A stretch of DNA of 64,000 bases from Rebecca billardiae RCC1528 (Eukaryota; Protista; Haptophyta): assembly GCA_965240325.2 (NCBI GenBank), contig OZ251226.1, positions 1,426,001 through 1,490,000 on the forward strand, written 5' to 3'. Made by a program: the position numbers and the translations under genes. Below are positions 3,746 to 40,057 of the stretch, in pieces (position 1 is the stretch's first letter; the number at the start of each line of letters is the position of its first letter). Below the pieces are notes generated by a model, which saw only the letters and a program-made list of their open reading frames with translations, had not been told where the DNA came from and made no database searches.

Positions 3746-4457
3746 TCACTCCCGCACGACGAGGCTCTCGAGCAGCGTGCGCACGGGAGGAGCGATCGGC
3801 GTCGGTTTCCCGCCCTCGTCAACGTACACGTGGACGAACGTGCCCGCGGCCGCTGCCCGCTGCTCGGCCGCCGCCTTTTCAGCGACTCCGCCGTCAAAGA
3901 TGCCTATGGCGTACGCCACGCTGGACGAGCCCACGCGCTCGACGCGCAGGCCGATGTCGACGGGGTGCGGGTAGGTGAGCGGCTCGAAGTACCGGCACGA
4001 CGACTCGGCGACGAAGCGGGGCGCCTCCTTGCCGATGCCGTGCCGGATCAGGTGCTCGTTGACCGCATCGTCCATAAATGCGTAGTAGATCACCTGCGTC
4101 GTGTGGCGCGCGCGCGCGTGGGAGGGAGGCGGGTGAAGGGTGGACAGCCGCAGGCGCGCCGCTTGTCTCGCGCCAGTATGGTATCCGTGCGCCGCGGCGG
4201 CGACGCCCGTCGCGCGCGTCGCGCACGTTGTTGATGTGCCCAAAGCCTGAGGAGCAGGCGGGCGCAAGGGCGGGGACACGCGCGCGCGCGCATGCAAGGG
4301 GTCAGTGGAGCTGGCGTGGCAGAGGCACCGAGGTGATACGGAGTGTCGCACCGTCCGTGTCATTCCAGCGCGTCTGCCGGCGCTCAAAGAGCGCAAACGC
4401 GCTCCGTGCCGGCGGCGGCGCGCGTGTGGACAGCCGACGCACGTGCACGCCCGCCAT
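3746..4457 (-). CDS. Hotdog-fold acyl-CoA thioesterase (4HBT/YbgC-like); exons 4457-4352, 4246-4227, 4093-3746
   Basis: The spliced product reads [27 protein letters not shown]...FVAESSCRYFEPLTYP...GLRVERVGSSSVAYAIGIF...GTFVHVYVD. This has the RW-D-D-x-GH-NN signature of the family. Confidence 0.88.
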
Positions 4458-4989: not shown

Positions 4990-6010
4990 ATGACCGACGT
5001 CGCGACGGCCGCCGCTTCCCCGGCGCTCGACGCGCTGCCCAAGGCGTCACCCTCCTCGGTGAAGGGCCTGTGGACGATGGCCAAGCTCCTCTCTGCCTAC
5101 CTCGTCGGCTTCGCGCTCATCCGCGCCTCGGCGGTGTCGCTTCCCCTCGGCGTCGGCATCTCCGCGATGGCGCTGTCTGGGGTGCGCGGCGGCGACGCGC
5201 GTACACGGCCTCGCGTGGCAATGCACGACCCAACGCGCACTCCAAACCGCCTGCGGCGCCAGCCGCACCGCCAGTGCACTCACCCGAGCCGCCGCGCGCC
5301 CTGCGACCCGCGACCGTGCGCGCGCAGTTTTTCGTTGTTGGTGTGGACTGCAGCCGCCGCACCTTCTTCGCAGGCAAGGCTCTCAACGACTTTGTGGGCG
5401 CACTCGTGCTCCTGCCCCTCCTTCGCTCGCTCGACTCCGTGCGCCAGTCGCCCAAGGTGCGCCGCGCGGCAGTGCGGTCGCGGCTCGACCGCGCGGCGCC
5501 ATGCGTCACGGCGGGCGTGCGGCGCGAGCATCGGCGGTGTGCGTGCGGCGCGCGCAGCCCGTTGCTCACTCGCGTTCGCGTCTCGCGCCGCCGCCACCGC
5601 CGCCGCCGCCCCGTCGCGCCGCGCAGGGTGGCCACGGCCTCGTGACGCGCCTGCTCAGCGCGGCGCAGCGCTCGGGCCTCGTGCTCGCGATCGTTGCGGC
5701 CGCCGTCGGCGCCGCGATCTACTTCGGCCGCGTCGTCGACCTGCTCAAGTACTGGGTGGTTCCGCTGCTGTGCATGCACCTGCAGCTCGGCACCTTCACT
5801 TCGTCGACGAGCCGCGGCTCGTGGCCGTCGTACATGCTGCTCCACCCGGCGATGCAGGAGGCGGAGCACTCCGGCCTCGCGGAGGCGGCGCGCGAGACGC
5901 CCGCGTACGCGGTCAAGCAGCTGCACCTCGCGGCGGAGCGCGCGATGCCGTCGGGCGCGTCGTTCTCCGGCCTCGGCGCCTCGCTCATGCGCTTCGTCAT
6001 CGTCAGCGGC
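4990..6010 (+). other. Module 1 of fusion: degenerate plastid omega-6 (FAD6/DesA)-like desaturase domain lacking His boxes
   Basis: SGFFVVGVDCSRRTFFAGKALNDFVGALVLLPL parallels the FAD6 consensus TGFFVIGHDCAHKSF...VEDIVG.LAFLPL. LLKYWVVPLLCMHLQLGTFT parallels VKFWLMPWLGYHFWMSTFT. The His residues of box 1 are replaced by V and R, and the box 2 and box 3 regions are deleted or eroded. Confidence 0.65.
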
Positions 6011-9000
6011 AAGCGCGAGTTCGTCCTCTGGCCCCTCGGCGCGGCGCTCGTCGCGCTCAGCTCGCCGTCCGGCCGCGCGGCGCTCGCCATCGACTCGATG
6101 CCGTGGCAGCTCACGATGAAGGAGACGACGGAGTGGATGGCGCGGCACTACGAGATCCCCTTCATCCTCGTCGCCACCTACCTCACCGGCATCTACGTCG
6201 GCACCAAGCTGATGGCCTCGCGCCAGCCGTTCGACCTGAAGGGCGCGCTCGCCGCGTGGAACTTCCTGCTGAGCGCCGGCTCGATCACCGGCTTCGTGAT
6301 GGCGTCGCACCTCGCGATCAACGCGGTGCGCCACAAGGGCGTGCACGCGCTCGCGTGCGACAACACCGTGTGGTGGGGCAACCCCGCCGTCATGCTCTTC
6401 TGCCTCTCCAAGGTGCCCGAGCTCGTCGACACGGCGTTCATCGTGCTGCGCAAGAAGCCGCTCCACTTCCTGCACTACTACCACCACGCGACGGTGCTGC
6501 TCTTCTGCTGGGACGCGTGGGTGGTGAACAACGCGGTCGGCGGCATGTTCGCCATCATGAACCTCCTCGTGCACTCGATCATGTACGCGTACTACTGCGC
6601 GGCCGCGATCGGCGTGCGCTTCCCGCAGATCCTGCGCAAGAACATCACCAACCTGCAGCTCACGCAGATGGTGCTCGGCTGCAGCCTGTGCGTGTACAAC
6701 ATGTGCAACTGCAACCGCACGCCGTCGAACAACATGTACGGCCTCGCCATGTACGCCTCGTACTTCGCGCTCTTCCTCAACTTCTGGGTGCAGCAGTACG
6801 TGATCATGCCGCGCAAGAAGAAGGCGGCGGCGGCGGCGGCCAAGAAGGAGGAGGCGGCGGCCGCGGCGGCGGCGGCGGCGCCCAAGGGCGCCAAGCCGGC
6901 GGCGGCGGAGGAGAAGCTGCACTGGGGCTACTTCCTCTCGCCGATCAACTGGCCGATGGGCTCGTACATCGCTCTCGTCCACGCGCTCGGCATCTGGGGC
7001 CTGATGCGCGCGCCGTACGCCGCGCCGCAGACGTGGCTCTGGTCGTTCATCCTCTGGCCCATCTCGGGCTTCGGCATCACCGGCGGCGTGCACCGGCTGT
7101 GGTCGCACCGCTCGTACAAGGCGAAGGCGCCGTTCCGCTTCCTCACGATGGTCGCCAACTCGATCGCCAACCAGGGCACCATCCACCACTGGGCGCGCGA
7201 CCACCGCGTGCACCACCTCCACTCTGAGACGGACTCGGACCCGCACAACGCGCTCCGCGGCTTCTTCTTCGCGCACGTCGGCTGGCTGCTGCTCAAGAAG
7301 CGCCCCGCGGTGATCGAGGCGGGCAAGAAGGTGGACATGAGCGACATCGACGCCGACTGGGTCTGCGAGGTGCAGCGCAAGCTCGACCCCTTCTGGAACA
7401 TGTTCTGGTGCTTCGTCTTCCCCGCGCTCGTCGCGCAGCACGGCTGGGGCGAGAGCTTTGGCACGGGCGTGCTCGTCGCGGGCTTCATGCGCTACGTGTA
7501 CGTGCTGCACTGCACGTGGCTGGTGAACTCGGCGGCGCACCTGCACGGCGACCGGCCGTACGAGCCGCGCACCAACCCGTCCGAGAACTTCACCGTCGCC
7601 GTCGCCTCGCTCGGCGAGGGCTGGCACGACTGGCACCACAAGTTCGCGTTTGACTACGCGGCCTCGGAGTACGGCATCGCCTTCCAGTTCAACCCGACGA
7701 AGCTGATCATCGACATGGGCGCGTGGGTCGGGCAGGTGTACGAGCGGCGCCGCGCGACGGACATCTGGCAGCGCGAGGTGGCGCGGCGCGACGCGAAGGA
7801 GGCGGAGCTCGCCAAGCTCACGCTGCCGAAGGACTCGACCGAGCTGAGCAAGGCGTCGGTGCGCGGCGCGATCCCGGAGCACTGCTTCAAGCACTCGTAC
7901 GCCAAGTCCTTCTACCACCTCGCCGAGGACCTGGCGATCATCGGCGCGCTGGTGGGCGCGGTGCTGTACGCGCAGCAGGCGCTGCCGTCGTGGGCGATGG
8001 CGCTCGCGTGGCCCGTCTACTGGTTCTACGCCGGGCTCGTCGGCACGGGCCTGTGGGTGCTCGCGCACGAGTGCGGCCACGGAGGCTTCACCGCTAGCCA
8101 GGTGCGGCGCCGCGCGGCGCCGCGCGGCGCGCGCGCGAACCGAGCAAGCGGGCTGGCGAGCGGTGCGCGGCGGGATGCCGCGGCGTCGGGTGCCTGACCG
8201 CTCGCCCTGCCCGCGCCCCCCATCGCCCTGCCCGCGCCCGCAGACCGTGAACGACATCGTCGGCTTCACCCTGCACTCGGCGCTGCTGACGCCCTACTTC
8301 TCGTGGCAGATCACGCACGCGAAGCACCACCGCCGCACCAACCACCTCACCGATGGCGAGAGCTGGGTGCCGTCGGCGGGCAACCCGAACGGCAAGCGCG
8401 CGCAGTGGTACAAGACGCACGCCGGCACCATCTTCCGCATCGCGCTCGTCTGGACGATCGGCTGGTGGGTGTACCTCATCAACAACGACACCGGTGCGCG
8501 GCGCGTGCCGAGCGCGCGCGCGCGCGCGCGCGCGCGCGGCCAGCCAGCCTCTCGCGCCGCGCCGCCCCGCCCCGCGCGCGCGCCGTCGCGGCCACGTGCC
8601 GTCCCGACCTCTGACGCTCTCCGCCCCCGCCCCGCCGCCCTCTGCGCACAGGCGCGCGCAAGAACAAGGGCCAGTCCCACTTCGACCCGAACGCGCGCGG
8701 CCTCTTCTCCGCCAAGGAGGCGTGGAAGGTGCGGGCGTCGAACGCGGGCATGGTGGCGATGCTCGGCGTGCTCGGGTATGCGTGCCAGGTGTTCGGCGTG
8801 CGCCAGGTCGTGGCGCTCTACTTTGTGCCGCAGATGATTGTGAACATCTACCTCACGTGCATCACCTTCATGCAGCACACGCACGAGGCCGTGCCGCACT
8901 ACGACGAGAAGGAGTGGACGTGGCTGCGCGGCGGCCTCGCGACCGTCGACCGCTCGATGGGCGTCTGGTTTGACCGCCGGCTGCACCACATCACCGACTC

Positions 9001-9217
9001 GCACGTGTGCCACCACCTCTTCTCGGACATGCCCTTCTACGGCGCGAAGGAGGCGACGCCGTACATCGCGGAGCACTGCGGCAAGTACTACCGCTCGCAC
9101 GTCTCCACCTACGCCGGCTCGGTGTACCTCGGCTTTTGGCACGACTTTTACACGACCATGAAGGCGTGCCTGGTCGTGCAGCAGGACGGCGTCGACCACT
9201 TCTGGTACTTCAAGTGA
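4990..9217 (+). CDS. Four-module fatty-acid modification fusion (~1203 aa): degenerate FAD6-like desaturase + ELO elongase + delta-9 desaturase + FAD2-type desaturase; exons 4990-5181, 5328-5456, 5627-8101, 8244-8493, 8652-9217
   Basis: Four GT-AG introns give a continuous 3612-nt frame. ELO motifs: SKVPELVDTAFIVLRKK, FLHYYHH, MNLLVHSIMYAYY, ITNLQLTQM. Delta-9 His boxes: HRLWSH, HRVHH, HDWHH, plus WLVNSAAH. FAD2-type His boxes: HECGH, HAKHH, HVCHH, plus TFMQHT and EWTWLRGGLATVDR. Confidence 0.92.
6110..6810 (+). other. Module 2 of fusion: GNS1/SUR4 (ELO) condensing enzyme, ELOVL6/saturated-acyl-like
   Basis: HYYHH at about 6473-6487, plus the KxxExxDT, NxxxHxxMYxYY and TxxQxxQ motifs, and a GLAMYASYFALF C-terminal helix. 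Confidence 0.92.
6917..7775 (+). other. Module 3 of fusion: SCD/OLE1-type delta-9 desaturase with no fused cytochrome b5
   Basis: GITGGVHRLWSHRSYKA (HRLWSH at 7091-7108), WARDHRVHH (HRVHH at 7202-7216), DPHNALRGFFFAHVGWLL, and GEGWHDWHHKFAFDY (HDWHH at 7625-7639). Confidence 0.93.
7825..9217 (+). other. Module 4 of fusion: FAD2/FAD3-family (delta-12 or omega-3) desaturase
   Basis: VRGAIPEHCFKHS, GLWVLAHECGHGGF (HECGH at 8066-8080), LHSALLTPYFSWQITHAKHH (HAKHH at 8316-8330), SHFDP, and LHHITDSHVCHHLFSDMPFY (HVCHH at 9002-9016). Confidence 0.92.
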
Positions 9218-32896: not shown

Positions 32897-35800
32897 ATGG
32901 CGAGCGGCGCGCTCGCTACCCTTCTCGGTGCAGGCGTGATGACGGGTGGATCGTCACGCATCGCCCCTGCCCCCACCAGCCTCATCCGTCTCGACCTCGG
33001 CCGGCTTGACGCCAGCAACGCATCCTCACTCGCCGCGGTGCACGGCATCGCAGGCGCGCCGCCGCGCATGTGCGTGGGGCGCGACGAGTTCAACACGAGC
33101 CTGGCCATCGTGCCGTGTGACGAGGCCCGGGCCGAGTGGGCCGGCTCGCCCGTCTCCCAGCTCCGCCTCGTCAGCCCGTCCGAGAACCTCGCGGAGGGGC
33201 TGAAGCGGCACCTGCTCCTTTCATTTGGCGGCCGCCGCCGGGCGCGCGCCGCGCACGCGGCGGCGGCGGGCTCGCCCGCGACGCCGCTCCTCGTGTCCGA
33301 TCCCGAAGGGTTCTCCTGCCTCGGCACGCGCCGCGGCTGGTTCGGCGGCGACGGCGCGCCCGCGCTCGTCGCGTGCGAGTCGAGCCGGCGGCGCGCTTGG
33401 ACGGTGCAGACGCCGCCGCCGCCAGACGGCAAGTGCAGCGTGCTCACGCCGACGGCGCCGCCGTCGCCGCCTGGCTGGAGGGACGACGCGGCGCGGCTCG
33501 CGCCCGATCGCGTGCTCTGCCTCGGCCGCGCGGGCGAGCGCTGCCTCGCGCGCGTCGCGCCGCGCAAGGGCGCGCGCGGCGTGTGGCCGCTGGCACCCGC
33601 CGGGCCCATCACACCGCCTGCGTGGCTCGCGACGCGGCTGGTGCGCGGCGCGAGCAAGCAGCGCTTCGCGATGGTGCCGCGCAAGGGCCAGCGCGGCCGC
33701 ACGCTCGCCGGCGTCCGGCCGGCCACCAGCCCGGACATCGACCCGGACTGGGACGAGGAGGACGAGCTGCCGGCGGCCGCGGGCGCGCAGACCGGCTTTG
33801 GCGCCGCGCGCGCGGAGGGCAACGCGACCGTGCGCGCCGACGGCACGGTGGAGTGCGCGCGGGGCGCGGAGACGGCGGAGTGCGCCGCGGCGTGCGCCAT
33901 TCGCGTCAGCGCCAACGCCTCCAACGCGTCGGCGGGCGGCGAGACCGAGTGCGCCGCCGCCGCCGCGGGCGCGCGCGCGGCGTGCGCGGCGGCGCACGCG
34001 GCCGCGCAGGGCGACGGCAGCGTGCTCGGTGGCGGCGGCTCGGCGGCGGCGGCGCTGGGCGGCGGCGGCGGCGGCGCCGGCTCGTGGAGCCGCGCGTCGA
34101 TCTGTGCCGCGCTCGTCATGCTCTTCTGCGCCGCCGTCCTCTTCTGGGAGCTCGTGCGCCCGGCGGCCGCGCGGCTGCAACCGCTGCTCGGCGCAGGCAA
34201 GGCGGCGGGCGCCAGCGCGGACGAGTCGGGGCGGCCGGCGCCGCCGCCCGAGCACGCGCCGCCGCGGCCCGGGCGCGTGGCGGCGGTGGCGGCGGCGGCG
34301 GAGGAGGCGGCCGCGCCCTCGCCGCCCTCGCCGCGCGACTCCCCGCCGCGCGAGCCGCCCACCAGCCCCGAGGCGCTCACCACGGACGCGGCCATGTCGC
34401 AGGTCGAGGCGGCGTTGGCACGCGTCGAGATAGTGCAGGCGGCCGCGGCCGCGGCGCTCGCGGCGGCGGAGGAGGAGGCGCGCGCGGACGAGGCGACGGC
34501 GGCGGTGCTCGCGACCGCGCGCGAGCTCCGGCTCAGCTCGCCGCGCACACCGCGCGGCAGCGCGCACGCCGAGAGCGGCAGCGCCGCCGCCGCCGCGGAC
34601 GACGAGCGCACGCCTGCCTCGGGCGCGTCCACGCCTCCGGGGCCGGCGCGGCCGACGGCGGACGTGGGCGGCGGCGGCGGCGCGGCGGCGATGGTGGAGG
34701 CGGGGTTGGCGTCGGGCGCGGCGGGGGTGCGCGTGACGCCGATGCGCGCGCCGCCGCCCGTCGCCGCCGCCGCCGCCTCGCGCCGCGGCCCGGCCCTCGC
34801 CCACGACGTGGCCGAGCAGCCGGCGCCGCAGGTGGCGGAGGCGGCGATGGCGCGCGCGGCCGCGGCCGCGGCCGCGGCCGCGCGCGCCGCGCAGCTTGCG
34901 AAGGGCGAGGCGGACGGCGACGAGGGCTCGGAGGAGGCGGAGGACGACGATGCGGACGAGGACACCGAGGGGCCGATGCCGGGCTCGTCGCCCGAGCCCG
35001 CCTCCAAGCACGCGCCCGCCCAGCCGGCGGGCAGCGGCAGCGGCAGCGCGGCCGACGGCTTGAGCGGAGCCGCCAAGCCCGCGGCCGCGGCCGTGGCCGC
35101 GGCCGGCGGCGCCGCCGCCGCCGCCGGCGTCGCGGCGTGCGCCGCCGCCACCGCCGCCGCGGCGCGCAGCTGGCCCGCCGTCGCGCCGAGTGCGAGCGAG
35201 GCGAGCAAGCTCGCCGCGACCACCGACGTCACCGCCCTCAGCGCGCCCGAGCCCGCGCCCGAGCCCGCCGCCGAGGGCGAGGCCGCGGTGAGCGGCGCGC
35301 GCGCGCGCGCGCTCGCCGCCCTCGCCGCTCTGGGCAAGGACGAGGCCGCCGCCGCCGCGGCGAAGGGCGGGCCGCGGGGCGGGCTGGGGCGGGCAAAGAC
35401 GATGGGCGGCTCGAGCTCTGCCGCGCCGGGCGGCGCGCGCGGCGTGGGCACGATGGCCGCCGCCGCCGCCACCGCCGCATGCGGCTACACGGACACGGCG
35501 CGCGCTTGCCTGAGCGGAGGCGGCGGCGCGCGGCCGGGCGGCGCGGGCGCGCGCCGGCCCGCCGAGGCGGCGCAGCGCGTGTCGCGCGCGATCGCAGAGT
35601 CGACCGTCGCGTCGGCGATGAGCTCGGCGGTGCGCGCGGCCGTCGAGCGCGCGGCGAGCGCCGCGGGGCAGCCCTCCGCCGAGGCCGCGCCCGCCGCGCT
35701 CCACCCGCGCCGCGCCGCCGCCGCCGCCTCGGCCGCCGCGGCCGCGCGCGCCGGCTACCAGCCGTTCCTGCGCAGCAGCACGGGCGGCGGCGGCGGCGAG

Positions 35801-38800
35801 GGGAGCGGCGGGCGCGCGAGGGCGCAGCCGCACCCGGCGGCGACGCCGTCGCGCAGCTCGGCGCCGCCCGCGCCGTACGCCGCCGCGTCGGACGCGGACG
35901 AGGCGGCGGCACACGGCGCTGCGGCCGGCGCCGCCGCGCACGAGGGCGCGGGCGCGGGCGCGGGCGAGCGCGCGTCGGCGGGCACGCCGCCCGCGGCCGT
36001 GCGCGCCGCGCCCGGCCCGCTCCGGCCGCACCACTCCGCCGTCCGCCCGCCGCCCGCCGCGCGCTGGCAGATGCAGATGCAGGGCGCGCCGGGCGCCGCG
36101 CGCGACGCGCGCGCGCACTCCAGCGGCGGCTGCTCCTCTGCGACGCACACGCCCACCGCTGCGTCGCGCGCCACGTCTGAGCAGCTGTCTGCCGGCGGGC
36201 TGCTGCTGTCCGGCACGTCGGCGGCGACGACGGCGACGCCGCCGGGCGGGCCGACGCCGATGTGGCGGGACACGCGCGCGCGCGCCAGCGCCGCCGGCGC
36301 GGAGAGCGCGCCCACCTCGTCACTCCACTCGCCGCCGTCCGCCGACGCGTCGCTCGCGTCCGCGCGACACACGACCGCCGACAACTCCGCCTCCGAGCTG
36401 GACAACCCGAGCTGCACCGACGCGGGCGCGGGCGGCGGCGGCGGCGCGCCGGCGGGCAAGAAGCTGAAGGGGCGCGACTCCGCCGGCACGCCCTCGACCA
36501 TCAACTCGCCGCAGCCCGAGGCCGACGGCGCGCGCCGGCTGCCGACACCCGCAAGCAGCTCGCCGCTGCACGCGCGCCGCGCGCGCTCGCCGGCCGCCGT
36601 GCAGACGCCGTATGCGCGCCGCGAGGAGGAAGAGGAGGAGGAGGCGGCGGGCGGCAGCGGCGCGGGCGGTGCGCCGCGCGCCGGCTCGGCGCAGCCCGCC
36701 GCGCTCCCGCCGCCGCCCGGCGACGACGTCCTCGAGGCGATGGCGCCCCTCTTCGAGTTTGGCAGCGGGCGCGACGAGACGGGCCGCGCGCACGCCGACG
36801 CGCCGCTCGAGTTTGCGCCGCTGCCCGCCACGCCGGAGGGCGTGCGCGCGGCGGCGCAGCGCGCGGCGTCGGACTCGCTCGACCACGACGGCGGCGGGAC
36901 GGAGCGGCGCGAGGCGCTCGAGAACTCCGCCGTCGCCGCGTACCACTACCGCGAGGGCATGCGCGCCAACACGGAAGGCGCGACCGCGCGCGCAGCGGGT
37001 CACTTCTCGGCGTCGCTCGTCGTGTGGCCGTCGGTGCCGACGCTTCTCTCGCTCGCCAACATGCACCTCAAGCTCGGGGGGCCGTGCGCGGTGCGCGCGT
37101 GCGCGGCGAGCCGCGGCCGCCGCCGCAGCCGTGCCGCGCGCCTCGCTGCCCGCTCAGCAGACCCGCGGCCGCGCCGCCGGCCGCCCGCTCGGCCCGCCGG
37201 CCTGCCTGCTGCGCGCCACGCCCCGCGCTGCTGACGGCTCGATCTGACCGGCCCCCGCCCTCTCCCGCGTCGCCGCGCCCGCGCCGTGCGTCTGTGCGTG
37301 TGTCGCGCCCGCGCTCTCGGCGCGCGCCCGTCGCGGCTGGCGCGCGCGCAGGCGGTGGCGGAGGCGGTGTACCGCGCGCTGCTGCGGCGCGGCGCGCCCT
37401 CCGACTCGGCCGCCCTGTCTGTGGATGGCTCGGTGCTCGGCTCGGCCGCGGTCGTCGAGCTGACCTCGGGCCAGCGCCGGCTGCTGCGGCGCAAGCTGGA
37501 CGAGGTGCGCGCGCCGCGCGGCCCAGGCGCGCGGGCCGCGAGCCGAGAGCCCGCGCGGCCGCACCGCCGCCGCACCGCGCGCGCGCAGCAGCCGCTCGCG
37601 CGCCCTCGCGCCTGGGCCACGCGGCGCGCGCCTGCCCGCCGCCCCGCCCGCCGCCATCCCACCGCCATCCCCGCCCCTCCGCCGCCCCTCGGCTGCGCCC
37701 GGCCGCTCCCCACGGCGCGCGACGCGCAGGTCGCCGAGCGGAAGCGCAAGTCGGTGCAGTCGCTCCGCCGGCGCTCCGAGCCCAGCGCGCTCGCCGCCGT
37801 CGCGTCCACCGTGCCCGCGCGCAGCGCGCGGATCGAGGCGGCGGCGGACGCGGCGGTCACGTGGCTGGCGGTGCACGCGCTGCGGCAGCGCTCGCTCCGG
37901 GTGCGCTTCTCGCTCGCGGACTCGGTGGCGCCGCAGCCCTCGCCCGCCGGCGCGCGCTCCGGCGCGGGCTTCAGCCTGTTCGACCCGCTGCTCGGCGCGG
38001 AGGCGAGCTCGATCGCGGGCGCGGGCAGCACGCCAGGAGCACTGCTCACGCCCGGCAGAGCGGGCGCGCGCGGGTTTGGCGCGGCGGCGGCGGGTGGCGG
38101 CGGCGCGGGCGGCGCGCCGAGCCCGGGCGGCGGCGCGGGCGGCAGCGGCAAGCGCTCGCGCTCCACGCCGCGCGCGTCCACGATGCGCCGCACCGCGTCC
38201 TCGCCGGCGGTGCGCGTCGACGCCGAGGCTTCGGCCGACGCGGGCGGCGCGGGCCGCACCCTCTCCATCCCCGGCTCGGCCGCCGCGCTCAGCGCCGCCG
38301 CCGAGTCGAGCCGGCGCGCCGAGGTGTCGGAGCTGGTCCGGAGGTACGAGGAGATTGCGCAGGCGCGGCGCGCGTCGAGGGAGGCGGCGGAGGGCGGGCT
38401 CTCGCCGCCGCCCAAGCGCGCGAGCGCGGGCGACGCGGAGGCGGAGGGCGGCGCCGACGCGGACGCGTCCACCGCCACCACGCCCGGCCGCACGCGCACC
38501 GGCGGCAGCTTTGCCGCCTCGCCCGGCGCGGAGACGGAGCGGCGCGTGCAGTTTGCCAGGCACGGCACGTCGGGCTCGTTGCTCGCCTCGCCCGTCTCGC
38601 AGCGCCGCCAGCCGCGCCTCCGCGCCGCGTCCGTCGCCGACCTGCGCGAGTCGGTGCTCGCGCCGCCCATGTCGCGCGAGGAGGCGGAGGCGCACGCCGC
38701 GGCGGAGGCGGAGGTGGAGGCGCACATGGCCGCGGCGATGCGCGCCGCGGCGGAGGGCGGCGGCGGCAGCGACGGCGGCGGCGGCAGCGCGCTCTCGTCG

Positions 38801-39357
38801 CCGCCCGCCTCCGGCGCCGCCAGGCGGCGCACGCGCACGCGCAGCGGCAGGATGCGCGCCACCGCGGAGGAGGCGGAGGACGAGAGCCTCGACGCGGCGC
38901 TGCCCGACGGGCTCGCGCCGTCGCCGAGCGGCAAGGCGCCCTCCACCACCTCGTCGTCCGGCCGGCGGCGCAGCCGCGCCCACCTCGAGCCGCACGCGGA
39001 CAGCCCGTCGCCGGCGGCGCGGAGCCGCGGCTGGCGCGCGCTCCGCCCCGCCGTGCGCCTCGGCGCGCAGCTCTCCGCGCGCGCGATGCTCGCGCAGCGG
39101 TACGCGGACGAGGCCGAGCACGTCGCCGCCGAGGCGACCGAGGACCTGCTCGGCCGCCGGATCGACCAGCTCATCGCCAGCCAGCGGCGCACCACCACGA
39201 CGCGCGGCGGCGGCGGCGGCGGCGGCCGGCGCTCGGGCGGCGCCGCGTCGGCCGCGTCGGGCAGCACCGACGTGGTCGGCGGCTGGCGCTTCGTCGACGA
39301 CGACGACGAGGAGAGCGGCTCGGAGGCGGCCGAGAGCGACGGCGAGGACGGCTTTGA

Positions 39358-39396
<39 letters not shown>

Positions 39397-40057
39397 GCTG
39401 ATGGACGAGGAGGAGGAGGCCGCGCGGCAGCGGGGCGCGGCGCGGCGCAAGGGCACCGCCGTGCCGGGCCACTTTGCGTTCGTCGACGCGGCGCTCGACG
39501 ACATGGGCGGCTCGGGCAGCTCGCGGCGCGCCTCCACGTCCGCGCCGCAGTTTGTGAGCGCGCTGCCGAGCCGCCGCCCGTCCGTGGCGCGCGGCGCCGA
39601 GCCGCCGCGCCCGACGCGGCGCGGGGCCTCGATGCTCCTCTCGAAGAAGGGCGCGGCGGGCGGCGGCTCGTTTGGCGTGCCGCCGCGCCGCGCGAGCGCG
39701 TGCGCGTACGGCGGCACGCACTCGGCGCACGCGCACACGCACTCGCAGGCCATGGCCGCCGCGGTCGCCATCGCGGCCGCGGGCATGGACGAGGACTCCG
39801 ACTCGTCCGTGCCCTCCTCCGCCGCCGGCTTCGCCGGCGACACTCGGTACACCACGTCGGTCCCGCCGCCCGTGCCGTACGGCGTGCAGATGGGCACGGC
39901 CGTGGCCGCGCGCGCGGCGGGCGGGCGGCAGCTCTCCCGCCCGACCAACGACGTCGTGCGCGTCGGCCTCGGCCTCCCGCCAAAGATCGGCAGCGCCGGC
40001 ACCTCCGCGTCGTCGGAGGGCTCGAGGGGCGCGGCGCCGTGGAAGCGCGGCCGATGA
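32897..40057 (+). CDS. Giant (~2220 aa) Ala/Pro/Gly-rich single-pass membrane protein with Cys-rich ectodomain and a TPR-like unit; exons 32897-37090, 37352-37504, 37730-40057
   Basis: Two long ORFs are joined in frame by GT-AG introns. The N-terminal region has spaced C..W motifs reminiscent of ricin-B, plus N-glycosylation sequons. The TM segment is SICAALVMLFCAAVLFWELV. The TPR-like unit is YREGMRAN...HFSASLVVWPSVPTLLSLANMHLKLG. An acidic tract lies at ~39300-39420. Confidence 0.65.

What the first reader, a model, noticed from the sequence alone, without database searches (positions are those of the whole stretch)
4990..6010. N-terminal pseudo-desaturase (FAD6-like) retained in frame
Seen: clear FAD6/DesA-like blocks, but box 1 reads GVDCSRR instead of GHDCAHK and the later His boxes are missing. 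The hydrophobic helices and two clean introns are preserved. Inference: the ancestral fusion may have used a FAD6-type omega-6 module that decayed once a FAD2-type module was appended at the C-terminus (module replacement). The relic may persist as a topology, scaffold or partner-binding domain.
Basis: partly seen in the sequence, partly recalled or inferred. Interest (0 to 1): 0.75.

Follow-up and report, generated by a model that had tools for sequence, protein, structure and literature searches.

The report
Dead FAD6-type desaturase domain, conserved
The first ~330 residues of a giant algal fatty-acid enzyme (elongase + two desaturases in one chain) are a desaturase of the chloroplast/cyanobacterial FAD6 type that has lost all its iron-binding histidines yet is kept by selection. 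The same dead module sits in front of many different lipid enzymes in other protists, so it is probably a working non-catalytic part, not junk.

Summary
Exons 1-3 (4990-5181, 5328-5456, 5627-c.5986) encode a collinear, shortened FAD6/DesA-type desaturase with no histidine boxes (box 1 = GVDCSRR, 5340-5360).

- **Profile match:** the module profile against intact FAD6/DesA gives probability 98.5%, E 1.6e-15. Against the protein's own FAD2 module it gives 49%, and against its delta-9 module nothing.
- **Fold:** an AlphaFold model of an ortholog matches only the Chlamydomonas FAD6-like subunit FADL/FAD6a (Z 12.5; next best 4.8).
- **Expression in relatives:** transcripts of four relatives (one named as Pavlovales) carry the module in one 1186-1226-aa ORF, and one cDNA contig skips all four predicted introns.
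- **Selection:** dN/dS is about 0.38, between the catalytic domains (0.21-0.33) and the linkers (0.62-0.76).

The "module replacement" story is not supported as stated. The same dead module, with the same internal deletion and a shared KR[DE] tail motif, precedes delta-9 alone, delta-9+FAD2, cytochrome-b5 front-end desaturases and a KCS condensing enzyme. These modules form one clade, so the decay predates this architecture.

My best reading is a non-catalytic membrane scaffold or pseudo-partner domain. That function is inferred, not shown.

I found no paper describing it. The scan's first stage noted the same stretch before (s1-350529).

The parts
4990..5181 (+). Exon 1 (64 aa). Short cytosolic N-terminus with the FAD6-type 'LP...S..K..W' lead-in, then the TM1-TM2 hairpin. 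There is no room for a targeting presequence.
   Evidence: ATG, frame, GT donor. Collinear with FAD6 profile positions 36-76. Aligns to ortholog N-termini. Covered by a relative's cDNA contig.
5182..5327 (+). Intron 1 (146 nt, GT..AG, phase 0).
   Evidence: Absent from the relative's cDNA contig. The junction ALSG|FFVVG is continuous in the orthologs.
5328..5456 (+). Exon 2 (43 aa). End of TM2, the degenerate His box 1 and the following amphipathic helix (NDFVGALVLLPLL). The box-2 region carries no His.
   Evidence: hhalign against intact FAD6/DesA: probability 96%, E 4.2e-9, template positions 77-114.
5340..5360 (+). G-V-D-C-S-R-R, the former His box 1 (G-H-D-C-x-H-x). Both His are replaced, while the central D-C is kept in nearly all dead modules.
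   Evidence: D and C are invariant or nearly invariant columns.
5457..5626 (+). Intron 2 (170 nt, GT..AG, phase 0).
   Evidence: The cDNA contig's pieces on either side are adjacent on the record. The junction SPK|GG is continuous in the orthologs.
5627..5986 (+). First 120 residues of exon 3.
- TM3-TM4 with the KYWVVPLLCMH motif (5747-5779).
- A shortened cap region without the HH and box-3 histidines.
- The retained 'TPAY..K' remnant (5897-5923) of the FAD6 'IPxYNLR' motif.
   Evidence: hhalign probability 91.5%, E 8.8e-7 for TM3-TM4. Alignments. AlphaFold helices of the ortholog.
5987..6073 (+). Tail motif (RFVIVSGKRE) plus one hydrophobic helix (FVLWPLGAALVALSS). Inferred to be a fifth TM that carries the chain to the lumenal side for the ELO domain.
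   Evidence: The KR[DE] motif is shared with P0011, P0018, P0020, P0021, P0022 and P0031. The model has a helix here at low pLDDT. The topological role is an inference.
6134..9217 (+). Context: the catalytic rest of the same ORF.
- ELO elongase, about 6134-6820.
- SCD-type delta-9 desaturase, about 7043-7645.
- FAD2-type desaturase, about 7850-9214, across introns 8102-8243 and 8494-8651.
   Evidence: Pfam: ELO 2.4e-61, and FA_desaturase in three exons. Single ORFs of 1186-1226 aa in the relatives' transcripts.

Best explanation
The N-terminal ~330 residues are a catalytically dead, shortened FAD6/DesA-type membrane desaturase domain. They span exons 1, 2 and the start of exon 3.

**What it keeps and what it has lost**
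- It keeps the four-helix membrane core and part of the cytosolic cap.
- It has lost every His-box ligand of the di-iron centre, so it cannot desaturate.
- It has lost about 60 residues between box 2 and TM3, and most of the box-3 region.

**What it most likely does (inferred)**
- It is translated as the first part of a ~1200-aa ER polypeptide: dead domain, one TM, ELO, delta-9, FAD2-type desaturase.
- I think it works as a non-catalytic structural module: a membrane scaffold and built-in pseudo-partner.
- Live FAD6, FAD2 and FAD3-type desaturases pair with each other. This dead fold may dock in the same way against the live desaturase or elongase domains, or hold an acyl chain or lipid. Either would organise the multi-enzyme chain and fix its membrane topology.

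**Shown versus inferred**
- Shown: the homology, the fold, the loss of ligands, the expression in relatives, the purifying selection, and the recurrence in other fusions.
- Inferred: the scaffold, partner or lipid-holding role, and the topology argument.

**What the confidence figure covers**
- The figure of 0.6 is for the whole statement, function included.
- The identity as a conserved dead FAD6-type domain alone I would put near 0.9.
For: **Homology to FAD6/DesA specifically**
- A profile of five ortholog modules, searched against 1.84 billion proteins, finds named plant 'omega-6 fatty acid desaturase, chloroplastic' proteins and other HDC[AG]H-box desaturases as its only intact relatives, at E 1e-8 to 1e-4. 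These include cyanobacterial-looking, unnamed ones.
- hhalign against intact FAD6/DesA: probability 98.5%, E 1.6e-15, 144 columns.
- Against the protein's own FAD2 module: 49%, 41 columns. Against its own delta-9 module: nothing.

**Fold**
- The AlphaFold model of P0003:19-290 has pLDDT 76.6 and pTM 0.71.
- VIA-align gives Z 12.5 and 12.4, with about 200 residues aligned, to 8xqw_M and 8xks_K. The next best Z is 4.8.
- Those chains are the Chlamydomonas 'fatty acid desaturase domain-containing protein / FADL'.

**Dead**
- No His remains at the box positions.

**Expressed**
- Full-length transcripts exist in four relatives. One has an in-frame stop upstream of the ATG.
- A spliced cDNA contig covers exons 1-5.

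**Selected**
- NG86 dN/dS is 0.38 (range 0.21-0.50). The comparison values are ELO 0.21, delta-9 0.33, FAD2 0.24 and the linkers 0.62 and 0.76.

**Generic role**
- The same dead module precedes delta-9, delta-9+FAD2, b5 front-end desaturases, KCS and ELO-containing megaproteins in haptophyte-like and amoebozoan sequences.

**Topology parity**
- One hydrophobic helix follows the KR[DE] motif where a 7-TM ELO comes next. Two follow where a cytosol-starting domain comes next (sequences).

**Precedents**
- Chlamydomonas FAD6a has partly conserved boxes, no iron density and a bound fatty-acid-like ligand. It serves as a structural subunit (bioRxiv 10.1101/2024.09.02.610899).
- FAD6/FAD7, FAD6/FAD8 and FAD2/FAD3 heterodimers have been reported (Lou et al. 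2014, as cited in PMC11142380).
Against: - No experiment or structure shows contact between the dead domain and any live domain.
- I could not obtain inter-domain confidence or coordinates from the model.
- dS is 0.4-1.0 in a genome with extreme GC3, so the absolute dN/dS values are rough. The module also evolves about twice as fast as the catalytic domains.
- The degenerate modules sit on long branches, so their single clade could be partly long-branch attraction. The AU test group was named after the tree had been seen.
- No RNA data exist here for the window's own organism.
- Pfam itself does not call the domain (about 20 bits, under the 29.7 cut-off).
Confidence: 0.6

Rival explanations
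1. An ancestral fusion in this lineage carried a live FAD6-type omega-6 desaturase, which decayed because a FAD2-type module was added at the C-terminus of the same chain. The relic is what is left.
For: - The chain does carry a live-looking FAD2-type module that does the same chemistry.
- The nearest non-Pavlovales relative of the module (P0011/P0022) also has delta-9 + FAD2 downstream.
- Amoebozoan FAD6-like + delta-9 fusions keep boxes 1 and 2, which suggests a once-live ancestor.
Against: - Dead modules of the same starred clade, with the same deletion and tail motif, occur with no FAD2 module. Examples are P0031 (delta-9 only), P0018/20/21 (b5 front-end desaturases) and P0049 (KCS).
- AU p 0.0005 against a separate origin for the Pavlovales decay.
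- Continued purifying selection is not explained by replacement alone.
Confidence: 0.15
2. A neutral or near-neutral relic. The region survives only as a hydrophobic leader that inserts the chain into the ER membrane. Any four-helix segment would do, and the desaturase fold as such has no role.
For: - The module evolves faster than the catalytic domains (pN 0.23 against 0.10-0.14).
- It has large internal deletions.
- Exon 1 alone has no significant profile match.
Against: - Non-TM motifs are conserved across very distant fusions: the D-C of box 1, W..P....H in TM4, P.Y after box 3, and the KR[DE] tail.
- dN/dS is well under that of the linkers.
- The model keeps cap helices that match FADL.
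- ELO, delta-9 and FAD2 enzymes insert on their own in other organisms (established knowledge), so a leader is not needed.
Confidence: 0.15
3. The module is still an enzyme or metal site of another kind. It would use the conserved Asp-Cys of old box 1 and the conserved TM4 His (and LLHP His) in place of the di-iron histidines.
For: D and C of box 1 and the TM4 His are among the few invariant columns shared by live and dead modules.
Against: - All eight canonical ligands are gone.
- All eight are required in membrane desaturases (established knowledge).
- The same D, C and TM4 His are also conserved in live FAD6, so they are more simply explained as fold residues.
- The TM4 His is lost in some dead modules (P0049, P0031, P0025).
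Confidence: 0.05
4. A gene-model artefact in this genome. Exons 1-2 would not be part of the mature mRNA or protein here (for example an alternative downstream start), even though relatives use them.
For: - No RNA run of this organism was available.
- The database's own gene call for this locus (P0001) starts inside exon 3.
Against: - The reading frames of exons 1 and 2 are open and phase-compatible, with canonical GT..AG introns.
- They are 62-78% identical to the relatives' expressed N-termini, with dN/dS 0.35-0.50. That would not hold for untranslated DNA.
- P0001 is a prokaryote-style ORF call that also runs into intron 3.
Confidence: 0.03

Closest known systems
FAD6 / DesA omega-6 (delta-12) acyl-lipid desaturases of plastids and cyanobacteria
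   Same: - The order of sequence blocks is the same from the N-terminal 'LP..VF....K.W' lead-in to the 'IPxYNLR' motif. In between come TM1-TM2, the box-1 context (G-x-D-C), the helix 'N/E-D-x-V-G...P-L', and TM3-TM4 'K-[YF]-W-L-x-P-W....H'.
- hhalign probability 98.5%.
- These are the only intact relatives found by the exhaustive profile search.
   Different: - All three His boxes are lost.
- About 60 residues between box 2 and TM3, and most of the box-3 cap, are deleted.
- There is no N-terminal targeting presequence; algal FAD6 has about 85 extra residues.
- It is fused to ER-type enzymes instead of standing alone.
- It adds a KR[DE]+TM tail that FAD6 lacks.
Chlamydomonas FADL / FAD6a, subunit of the Ycf2(Orf2971)-FtsHi chloroplast import motor (PDB 8xks chain K, 8xqw chain M)
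   Same: - It is the best and only clear structural match (Z 12.4-12.5, about 200 residues).
- It is a FAD6-derived protein used structurally. The paper reports partly conserved His boxes, no iron density and a fatty-acid-like ligand.
   Different: - FADL is a separate plastid inner-envelope protein in a protein-import machine, and it keeps part of its boxes.
- Identity to the model is only 17%.
- The profile of the module does not find FADL by sequence.
- The module here is an N-terminal domain of ER lipid enzymes, with no boxes at all.
Natural desaturase fusions: OLE1-type delta-9 + C-terminal cytochrome b5, and N-terminal cytochrome b5 + front-end desaturase
   Same: These are multi-domain ER polypeptides that put helper and catalytic parts of fatty-acid modification in one chain. 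Several carriers of the dead module have exactly these architectures downstream of it.
   Different: In those fusions the added domain (cyt b5) has a known redox role. The added domain here is a dead copy of a desaturase with no cofactor ligands.
Dead-paralog partners of live enzymes ('prozymes', e.g. trypanosomatid AdoMetDC prozyme), from my own knowledge and not tested here
   Same: The concept is the same: a catalytically dead homolog kept by selection because it pairs with a live enzyme.
   Different: Here the dead and live parts are different desaturase subfamilies joined in one chain. Pairing has not been shown.

Membership tests
Membrane fatty acid desaturase superfamily (Pfam PF00487 FA_desaturase) | Sequence match to the family profile at or above the curated cut-off | tested here: not met
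   Single window exons give no hit. The ortholog N-termini score 11.5-20.8 bits (E 4e-4 to 0.26) against a cut-off of 29.7, always at profile positions 4-63.
Membrane fatty acid desaturase superfamily (Pfam PF00487 FA_desaturase) | Homology detectable by profile-profile comparison and exhaustive profile search | tested here: met
   hhalign probability 98.5%, E 1.6e-15. Window exon 2 gives 96% and the exon 3 N-part 91.5%. Intact desaturases are hit at E down to 2e-8 among 1.84e9 proteins.
Membrane fatty acid desaturase superfamily (Pfam PF00487 FA_desaturase) | Four-TM core plus cytosolic cap fold | tested here: met
   AlphaFold model of the ortholog module: pLDDT 76.6, over 90 in the TM core. 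Z 12.5, rmsd 4.2 A, 197 residues aligned to FADL; next best Z 4.8. The cap is shortened.
Membrane fatty acid desaturase superfamily (Pfam PF00487 FA_desaturase) | Three histidine boxes (eight His) that bind the di-iron centre | tested here: not met
   Box 1 is V-D-C-S-R (5343-5357). The box-2 region has no conserved His. Box 3 and the HH after TM4 are deleted or replaced. The same holds in all five orthologs.
Membrane fatty acid desaturase superfamily (Pfam PF00487 FA_desaturase) | Iron binding and O2-dependent desaturation | not testable with these tools
   Needs a purified protein or a heterologous expression assay.
FAD6/DesA subfamily (plastid/cyanobacterial omega-6 acyl-lipid desaturase) | Closer to the HDC[AG]H-box FAD6/DesA group than to the HECGH-box FAD2 group or to SCD-type delta-9 | tested here: met
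   All intact hits carry G-H-D-C-[AG]-H, and some are named chloroplastic omega-6 desaturase. hhalign gives 98.5% against 49% (own FAD2) and 1% (own delta-9). The tree places the module inside FAD6/DesA when rooted on FAD2 domains.
FAD6/DesA subfamily (plastid/cyanobacterial omega-6 acyl-lipid desaturase) | Plastid targeting presequence (eukaryotic FAD6) | tested here: not met
   The conserved lead-in block starts about 15 residues after the Met. Algal FAD6 (P0085, P0086) has about 85 extra N-terminal residues. No targeting predictor was run.
Chlamydomonas FADL/FAD6a-type structural FAD6 paralog | Part of the Ycf2/Orf2971-FtsHi import motor; direct sequence relationship to FADL | tested here: not met
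   The profile of the module finds no PDB chain by sequence. The similarity is at fold level only, with 17% identity. The fusion partners are ER lipid enzymes.

The most novel reading that the evidence does not exclude
The window shows one member of an old, undescribed domain family. The family is a FAD6-derived dead desaturase module with a characteristic deletion and a KR[DE]+TM tail. It has been attached repeatedly to ER acyl-chain enzymes: delta-9, FAD2-type and front-end desaturases, ELO and KCS elongation enzymes. Carriers occur in Pavlovales sequences, in Amoebozoa such as Paramoeba, and in metatranscriptome sequences of unknown origin. In this reading it acts as a built-in pseudo-partner, or as a lipid-presenting subunit that assembles these enzymes into channelled 'assembly lines'.
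Probability: 0.3. Interest if true: 0.8.

Novelty: new variant of a known kind. Interest (0 to 1): 0.62.

Why it matters
**Open question in the field.** Membrane desaturases and elongases are thought to work in loosely defined ER 'metabolons', and how they are held together is unresolved. A conserved dead desaturase fold sits in the same chain as live elongases and desaturases in several eukaryotic groups. That gives a concrete, deletable candidate for the organising part.

**Practical use.** Pavlovales enzymes are used for engineering omega-3 oils. Whether the N-terminal module is needed for activity, stability or channelling decides how such genes should be trimmed for expression.

**Annotation.** Current gene models cut this gene into pieces or start it inside exon 3. 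As a result the module is missing from the databases.

Tried and rejected
- **Pfam on single exons:** nothing for exons 1, 2 and the start of exon 3. They are too short, so I went on to the orthologs and to profiles.
- **PDB sequence search with the module profile:** no chain found, even at E up to 1. The relation to FADL shows only at fold level.
- **NCBIfam:** no help in naming FAD6. It gave only weak sub-threshold matches to bacterial DesA/DesB models.
- **Foldseek alone:** weak (E 6e-3, TM 0.50). The VIA-align second look gave the clear result.
- **Hydropathy scan:** a simple Kyte-Doolittle threshold scan was too crude to count TM helices. I used the model's helices instead.
- **First dN/dS script:** it mis-indexed window codons after an insertion, because of the keeplength option. 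It was replaced. The N-terminal figures were the same in both.
- **Sequencing runs:** only one run held anything, a relative's spliced contig. There was no RNA of the window's organism, so the transcription start here stays untested.
- **Fusions with all three His boxes intact:** none found among the 56 hits or the search with the Stenamoeba module. The latter is a word-based search with few candidates, so absence is weak.
- **Duplicate of the protein's own FAD2 or delta-9 module:** rejected.
- **Literature:** seven searches found no description of this fusion or of a dead desaturase domain family. The Diacronema lutheri genome paper does not mention it.
- the three window exons were never joined into one protein for any search, fold or alignment. 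They were searched by reference one at a time and kept as separate rows in scripts. The full-length work used the relatives' own uninterrupted proteins.
- **Second structure job:** not used, because neither inter-domain confidence nor coordinates are returned.
Full report
**What is at 4990-6010**

The + strand carries a spliced eukaryotic gene in very GC-rich DNA (about 68-70% here).

- The ATG at 4990 is the first in its frame after a stop just upstream of 4900.
- Reading the sequence gives exon 1 at 4990-5181 (64 aa) and intron 1 at 5182-5327.
- Exon 2 is 5328-5456 (43 aa), intron 2 is 5457-5626, and a long exon 3 runs from 5627 to 8101.
- Two more exons follow (8244-8493 and 8652-9217).
- All of the first junctions are phase 0, with GT..AG introns.
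- Pfam on the exon translations finds ELO (E 2.4e-61), an SCD-type FA_desaturase, and a FAD2-type FA_desaturase spread over exons 3-5. It finds nothing in exon 1, exon 2 or the first 158 residues of exon 3.

They were always used one by one, by reference.

**The gene model and its expression in relatives**

A word search with the first 165 residues of exon 3 found the window's own truncated ORF call (P0001) and seven relatives. Among them are P0002, P0003, P0005 and P0008, at 1186-1226 aa.

- All four carry an N-terminal extension that matches exons 1 and 2. Their box-1 stretches read G-V-D-C-[SV]-R-[RGH].
- P0005 is an MMETSP transcript. Its cluster holds NCBI fragments from Pavlovales sp. 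CCMP2436, so the window is most likely from a related Pavlovales-type haptophyte.
- The four proteins come from transcript contigs of about 3.9-4.6 kb, each with one uninterrupted ORF.
- In L001 an in-frame TAG lies upstream of the ATG.
- The only public run holding similar sequence gave one 3887-nt contig of a relative, under 90% identical. It lies on exons 1, 2, 3, 4 and 5 and skips every intron.
- The three window exon translations align end to end with the relatives' continuous proteins, at junctions ALSG|FFVVG and SPK|GG.
- No RNA from the window's own organism was available.

**Is it a desaturase, and of which type?**

Pfam matches FA_desaturase weakly on four of the five ortholog N-termini. 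The E values are 4e-4 to 0.26 at 11.5-20.8 bits, under the 29.7 cut-off, and always at profile positions 4-63.

A profile of the five N-termini (A1) was scored against 1.84 billion proteins and gave 56 hits at E up to 1e-3.

- The intact ones all carry the G-H-D-C-[AG]-H box and the FAD6-type box 2.
- Several are named 'omega-6 fatty acid desaturase, chloroplastic'.

Profile-profile comparison gave the following:

| Comparison | Probability | E-value | Columns |
|---|---|---|---|
| Module vs intact FAD6/DesA | 98.5% | 1.6e-15 | 144 |
| Module vs the proteins' own FAD2-type module | 49% | 1.8e-4 | 41 |
| Module vs the proteins' own delta-9 module | 1.4% | 0.038 | 8 (no real match) |
| Window exon 2 alone vs FAD6/DesA | 96% | 4e-9 | 38 |
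| Start of window exon 3 alone vs FAD6/DesA | 91.5% | 9e-7 | 36 |
| Window exon 1 alone vs FAD6/DesA | 0.4% (not significant) | 0.15 | 40 |

Exon 1, although not significant by itself, aligns collinearly just before exon 2's match.

An AlphaFold model of P0003:19-290, built with a 32-row alignment, reached pLDDT 76.6 and pTM 0.71, with the membrane core above 90.

- Foldseek's two top hits were chains of the Chlamydomonas Ycf2/Orf2971-FtsHi motor.
- VIA-align scored them at Z 12.5 and 12.4 over about 200 residues, against 4.8 for the next entry.
- That chain is the 'fatty acid desaturase domain-containing protein / FADL'. By sequence it is related to intact FAD6 at E 1e-34.

So the domain is a FAD6/DesA-type fold.

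**What has been lost and what is kept**

The alignments with live FAD6 show the following.

- Both His of box 1 are replaced (V and R in the window).
- There is no conserved His in the box-2 stretch. The window's G-G-H is N, K or S in the orthologs.
- About 60 residues are missing between box 2 and TM3.
- The HH after TM4 is missing, and box 3 is missing.
- The kept features are the N-terminal lead-in, TM1-TM2, the D-C of box 1, the following helix, TM3-TM4 with W..P....H, and the P.Y of the 'IPxYNLR' motif.

Without the eight histidines a membrane desaturase cannot bind its di-iron centre. That is established knowledge for this superfamily. I therefore regard the module as catalytically dead.

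**Selection**

Nei-Gojobori estimates were made over ten pairs: four transcripts, plus the window's exons kept as separate rows.

| Region | dN/dS |
|---|---|
| Dead module | 0.38 (range 0.21-0.50) |
| Tail / TM5 | 0.40 |
| ELO | 0.21 |
| Delta-9 | 0.33 |
| FAD2 | 0.24 |
| Linker 1 | 0.62 |
| Linker 2 | 0.76 |

dS is 0.4-1.0 and GC3 is extreme, so the numbers are rough. The ranking is clear, though: the module is constrained, less than the enzymes and more than the linkers.

**The unexpected part: the module is not peculiar to this gene**

Other hits are dead or half-dead modules in front of other enzymes.

| Protein(s) | Architecture after the module | Source, where known |
|---|---|---|
| P0031 | delta-9 only | |
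| P0022 (N-terminally partial; its module resembles P0011) | delta-9 + FAD2-type, no ELO | |
| P0018, P0020, P0021 | cytochrome b5 + front-end desaturase(s) | |
| P0068, P0071 | as P0018, with an ELO domain upstream of the module | Paramoeba atlantica (P0068; P0071 is an unnamed member of its cluster) |
| P0049 | FAE1/KCS condensing enzyme | |
| P0051 | FAD6-like + delta-9 + C-terminal cyt b5 | Polysphondylium |
| P0023, P0073 | FAD6-like + delta-9 + C-terminal cyt b5 | Stenamoeba (P0073) |
| P0084, P0025, P0056 | FAD6-like + delta-9 + C-terminal cyt b5 | |

- In Stenamoeba, boxes 1 and 2 are still present and box 3 is broken.
- The Pavlovales modules share two features that FAD6 lacks. These are the deletion between box 2 and TM3, and a tail motif '..LLW.KR[DE]' followed by hydrophobic helices. 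The deletion is shared with P0011, P0017/20/21, P0018, P0019, P0031 and P0034; the tail motif is seen in P0011, P0018, P0020, P0021, P0022 and P0031.
- In a tree rooted on the FAD2 domains, all dead modules fall in one group inside FAD6/DesA (support 93/86).
- The Pavlovales modules sit in a starred clade of 13 (100/98) together with those other architectures.
- A tree that keeps the Pavlovales modules apart from the other dead ones is worse by 60 log-likelihood units (AU p 0.0005).
- Two caveats apply: long branches are involved, and the group was chosen after seeing the tree.
- No fusion with three intact boxes turned up.

The identification as a FAD6-like pseudo-desaturase kept in frame stands. 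The causal story, decay after a FAD2 module was appended, does not fit. The decay, the deletion and the tail are shared with fusions that have no FAD2 module. An older live FAD6-like + delta-9 fusion remains a reasonable ancestor, given the half-intact amoebozoan forms.

**How it most likely works (inference)**

The module always stands next to ER acyl-chain enzymes of different chemistries, so its role should be generic, not specific to omega-6 desaturation.

- Live desaturases of these subfamilies pair with each other. FAD6/FAD7, FAD6/FAD8 and FAD2/FAD3 heterodimers are said to channel substrates (Lou et al. 2014, as cited in PMC11142380).
- A FAD6 paralog with partly conserved boxes, no iron density and a bound fatty-acid-like ligand serves as a structural subunit in Chlamydomonas (10.1101/2024.09.02.610899).
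- My best reading is a non-catalytic membrane scaffold or built-in pseudo-partner, possibly still holding an acyl chain, that organises the multi-enzyme chain.

A topology detail fits this reading.

- After the KR[DE] motif, the Pavlovales proteins have one hydrophobic helix before the seven-helix ELO domain.
- The fusions in which a cytosol-starting domain follows (delta-9 or cyt b5) have two.
- The number of membrane crossings before the first desaturase domain therefore stays even.
- This suggests that ELO was inserted into an older dead-module + delta-9 + FAD2 chain of the P0022 type.
- The ELO and desaturase topologies used in this argument are established knowledge from solved structures. 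They were not tested here.

**Novelty**

Seven literature searches found no description of the fusion or of a dead desaturase domain family. The Diacronema lutheri genome paper only counts desaturases and elongases. Public annotation splits the CCMP2436 ortholog into 'ELO family' and 'fatty acid desaturase, partial'. The scan's own first stage had noted the same stretch as 'elongase + delta-9 + FAD2-type desaturase, plus a dead desaturase' (s1-350529).

I rate the finding as a new variant of a known kind: a pseudoenzyme of the desaturase fold, in a new and recurrent fusion context.

**Limits**

- There is no RNA from this organism.
- There are no coordinates or inter-domain confidence from the model.
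- The orthologs are few.
- dS is saturating.
- The function is inferred only.

Noticed in passing
window 3749-4090 (-): A 4HBT hotdog-fold thioesterase superfamily ORF (Pfam 4HBT E 3.5e-9, 37 bits, above the cut-off). It lies head to head with the fatty-acid megaenzyme gene, about 600-900 bp from its ATG. This may be a divergently transcribed lipid gene pair.
   Followed up: partly
window 4990-9217 (+): The whole gene is a single chain: dead FAD6-like module + ELO + SCD-type delta-9 + FAD2-type desaturase, about 1200 aa. This is confirmed by single-ORF transcripts in four relatives. It belongs to the scan's separate note s1-350529.
   Followed up: partly
window 5645-8197 (+), protein P0001: The public collection's gene call for this locus (851 aa) starts inside exon 3 and reads on into intron 3. 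P0004 and P0007 likewise read through introns. NCBI splits the CCMP2436 ortholog into 'ELO family' and 'fatty acid desaturase, partial'. The dead module is therefore absent from current annotations.
   Followed up: yes
P0068 / P0071 (P0068: Paramoeba atlantica; P0071: unnamed ENA member of the same cluster), not in the window: These are megaproteins: ELO + dead FAD6-like module + cyt b5 + desaturase, with a further cyt b5 + desaturase in P0068. They are up to 1498 aa. They look like a second, independent 'assembly line' that uses the same dead module.
   Followed up: partly
P0049 / P0059 (JGI metatranscriptome), not in the window: A dead FAD6-like module (box 1 = G-N-D-C-A-G-G) is fused to a FAE1/KCS-type 3-ketoacyl-CoA synthase (Pfam E 3e-121).
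   Followed up: no
window 34001-40000: This stretch has 81-85% G+C, far above the 60-72% of the rest of the window. I did not look into it.
   Followed up: no
window 5581-5628, 6811-6889, 8501-8583: Simple GC-rich repeats were flagged by the read-laying tool. These are (GCC)n at the end of intron 2, an Ala/Lys-rich (GCG/GCC)n linker between ELO and delta-9, and (GC)n in intron 4. The coding linker repeat differs in length between relatives.
   Followed up: no
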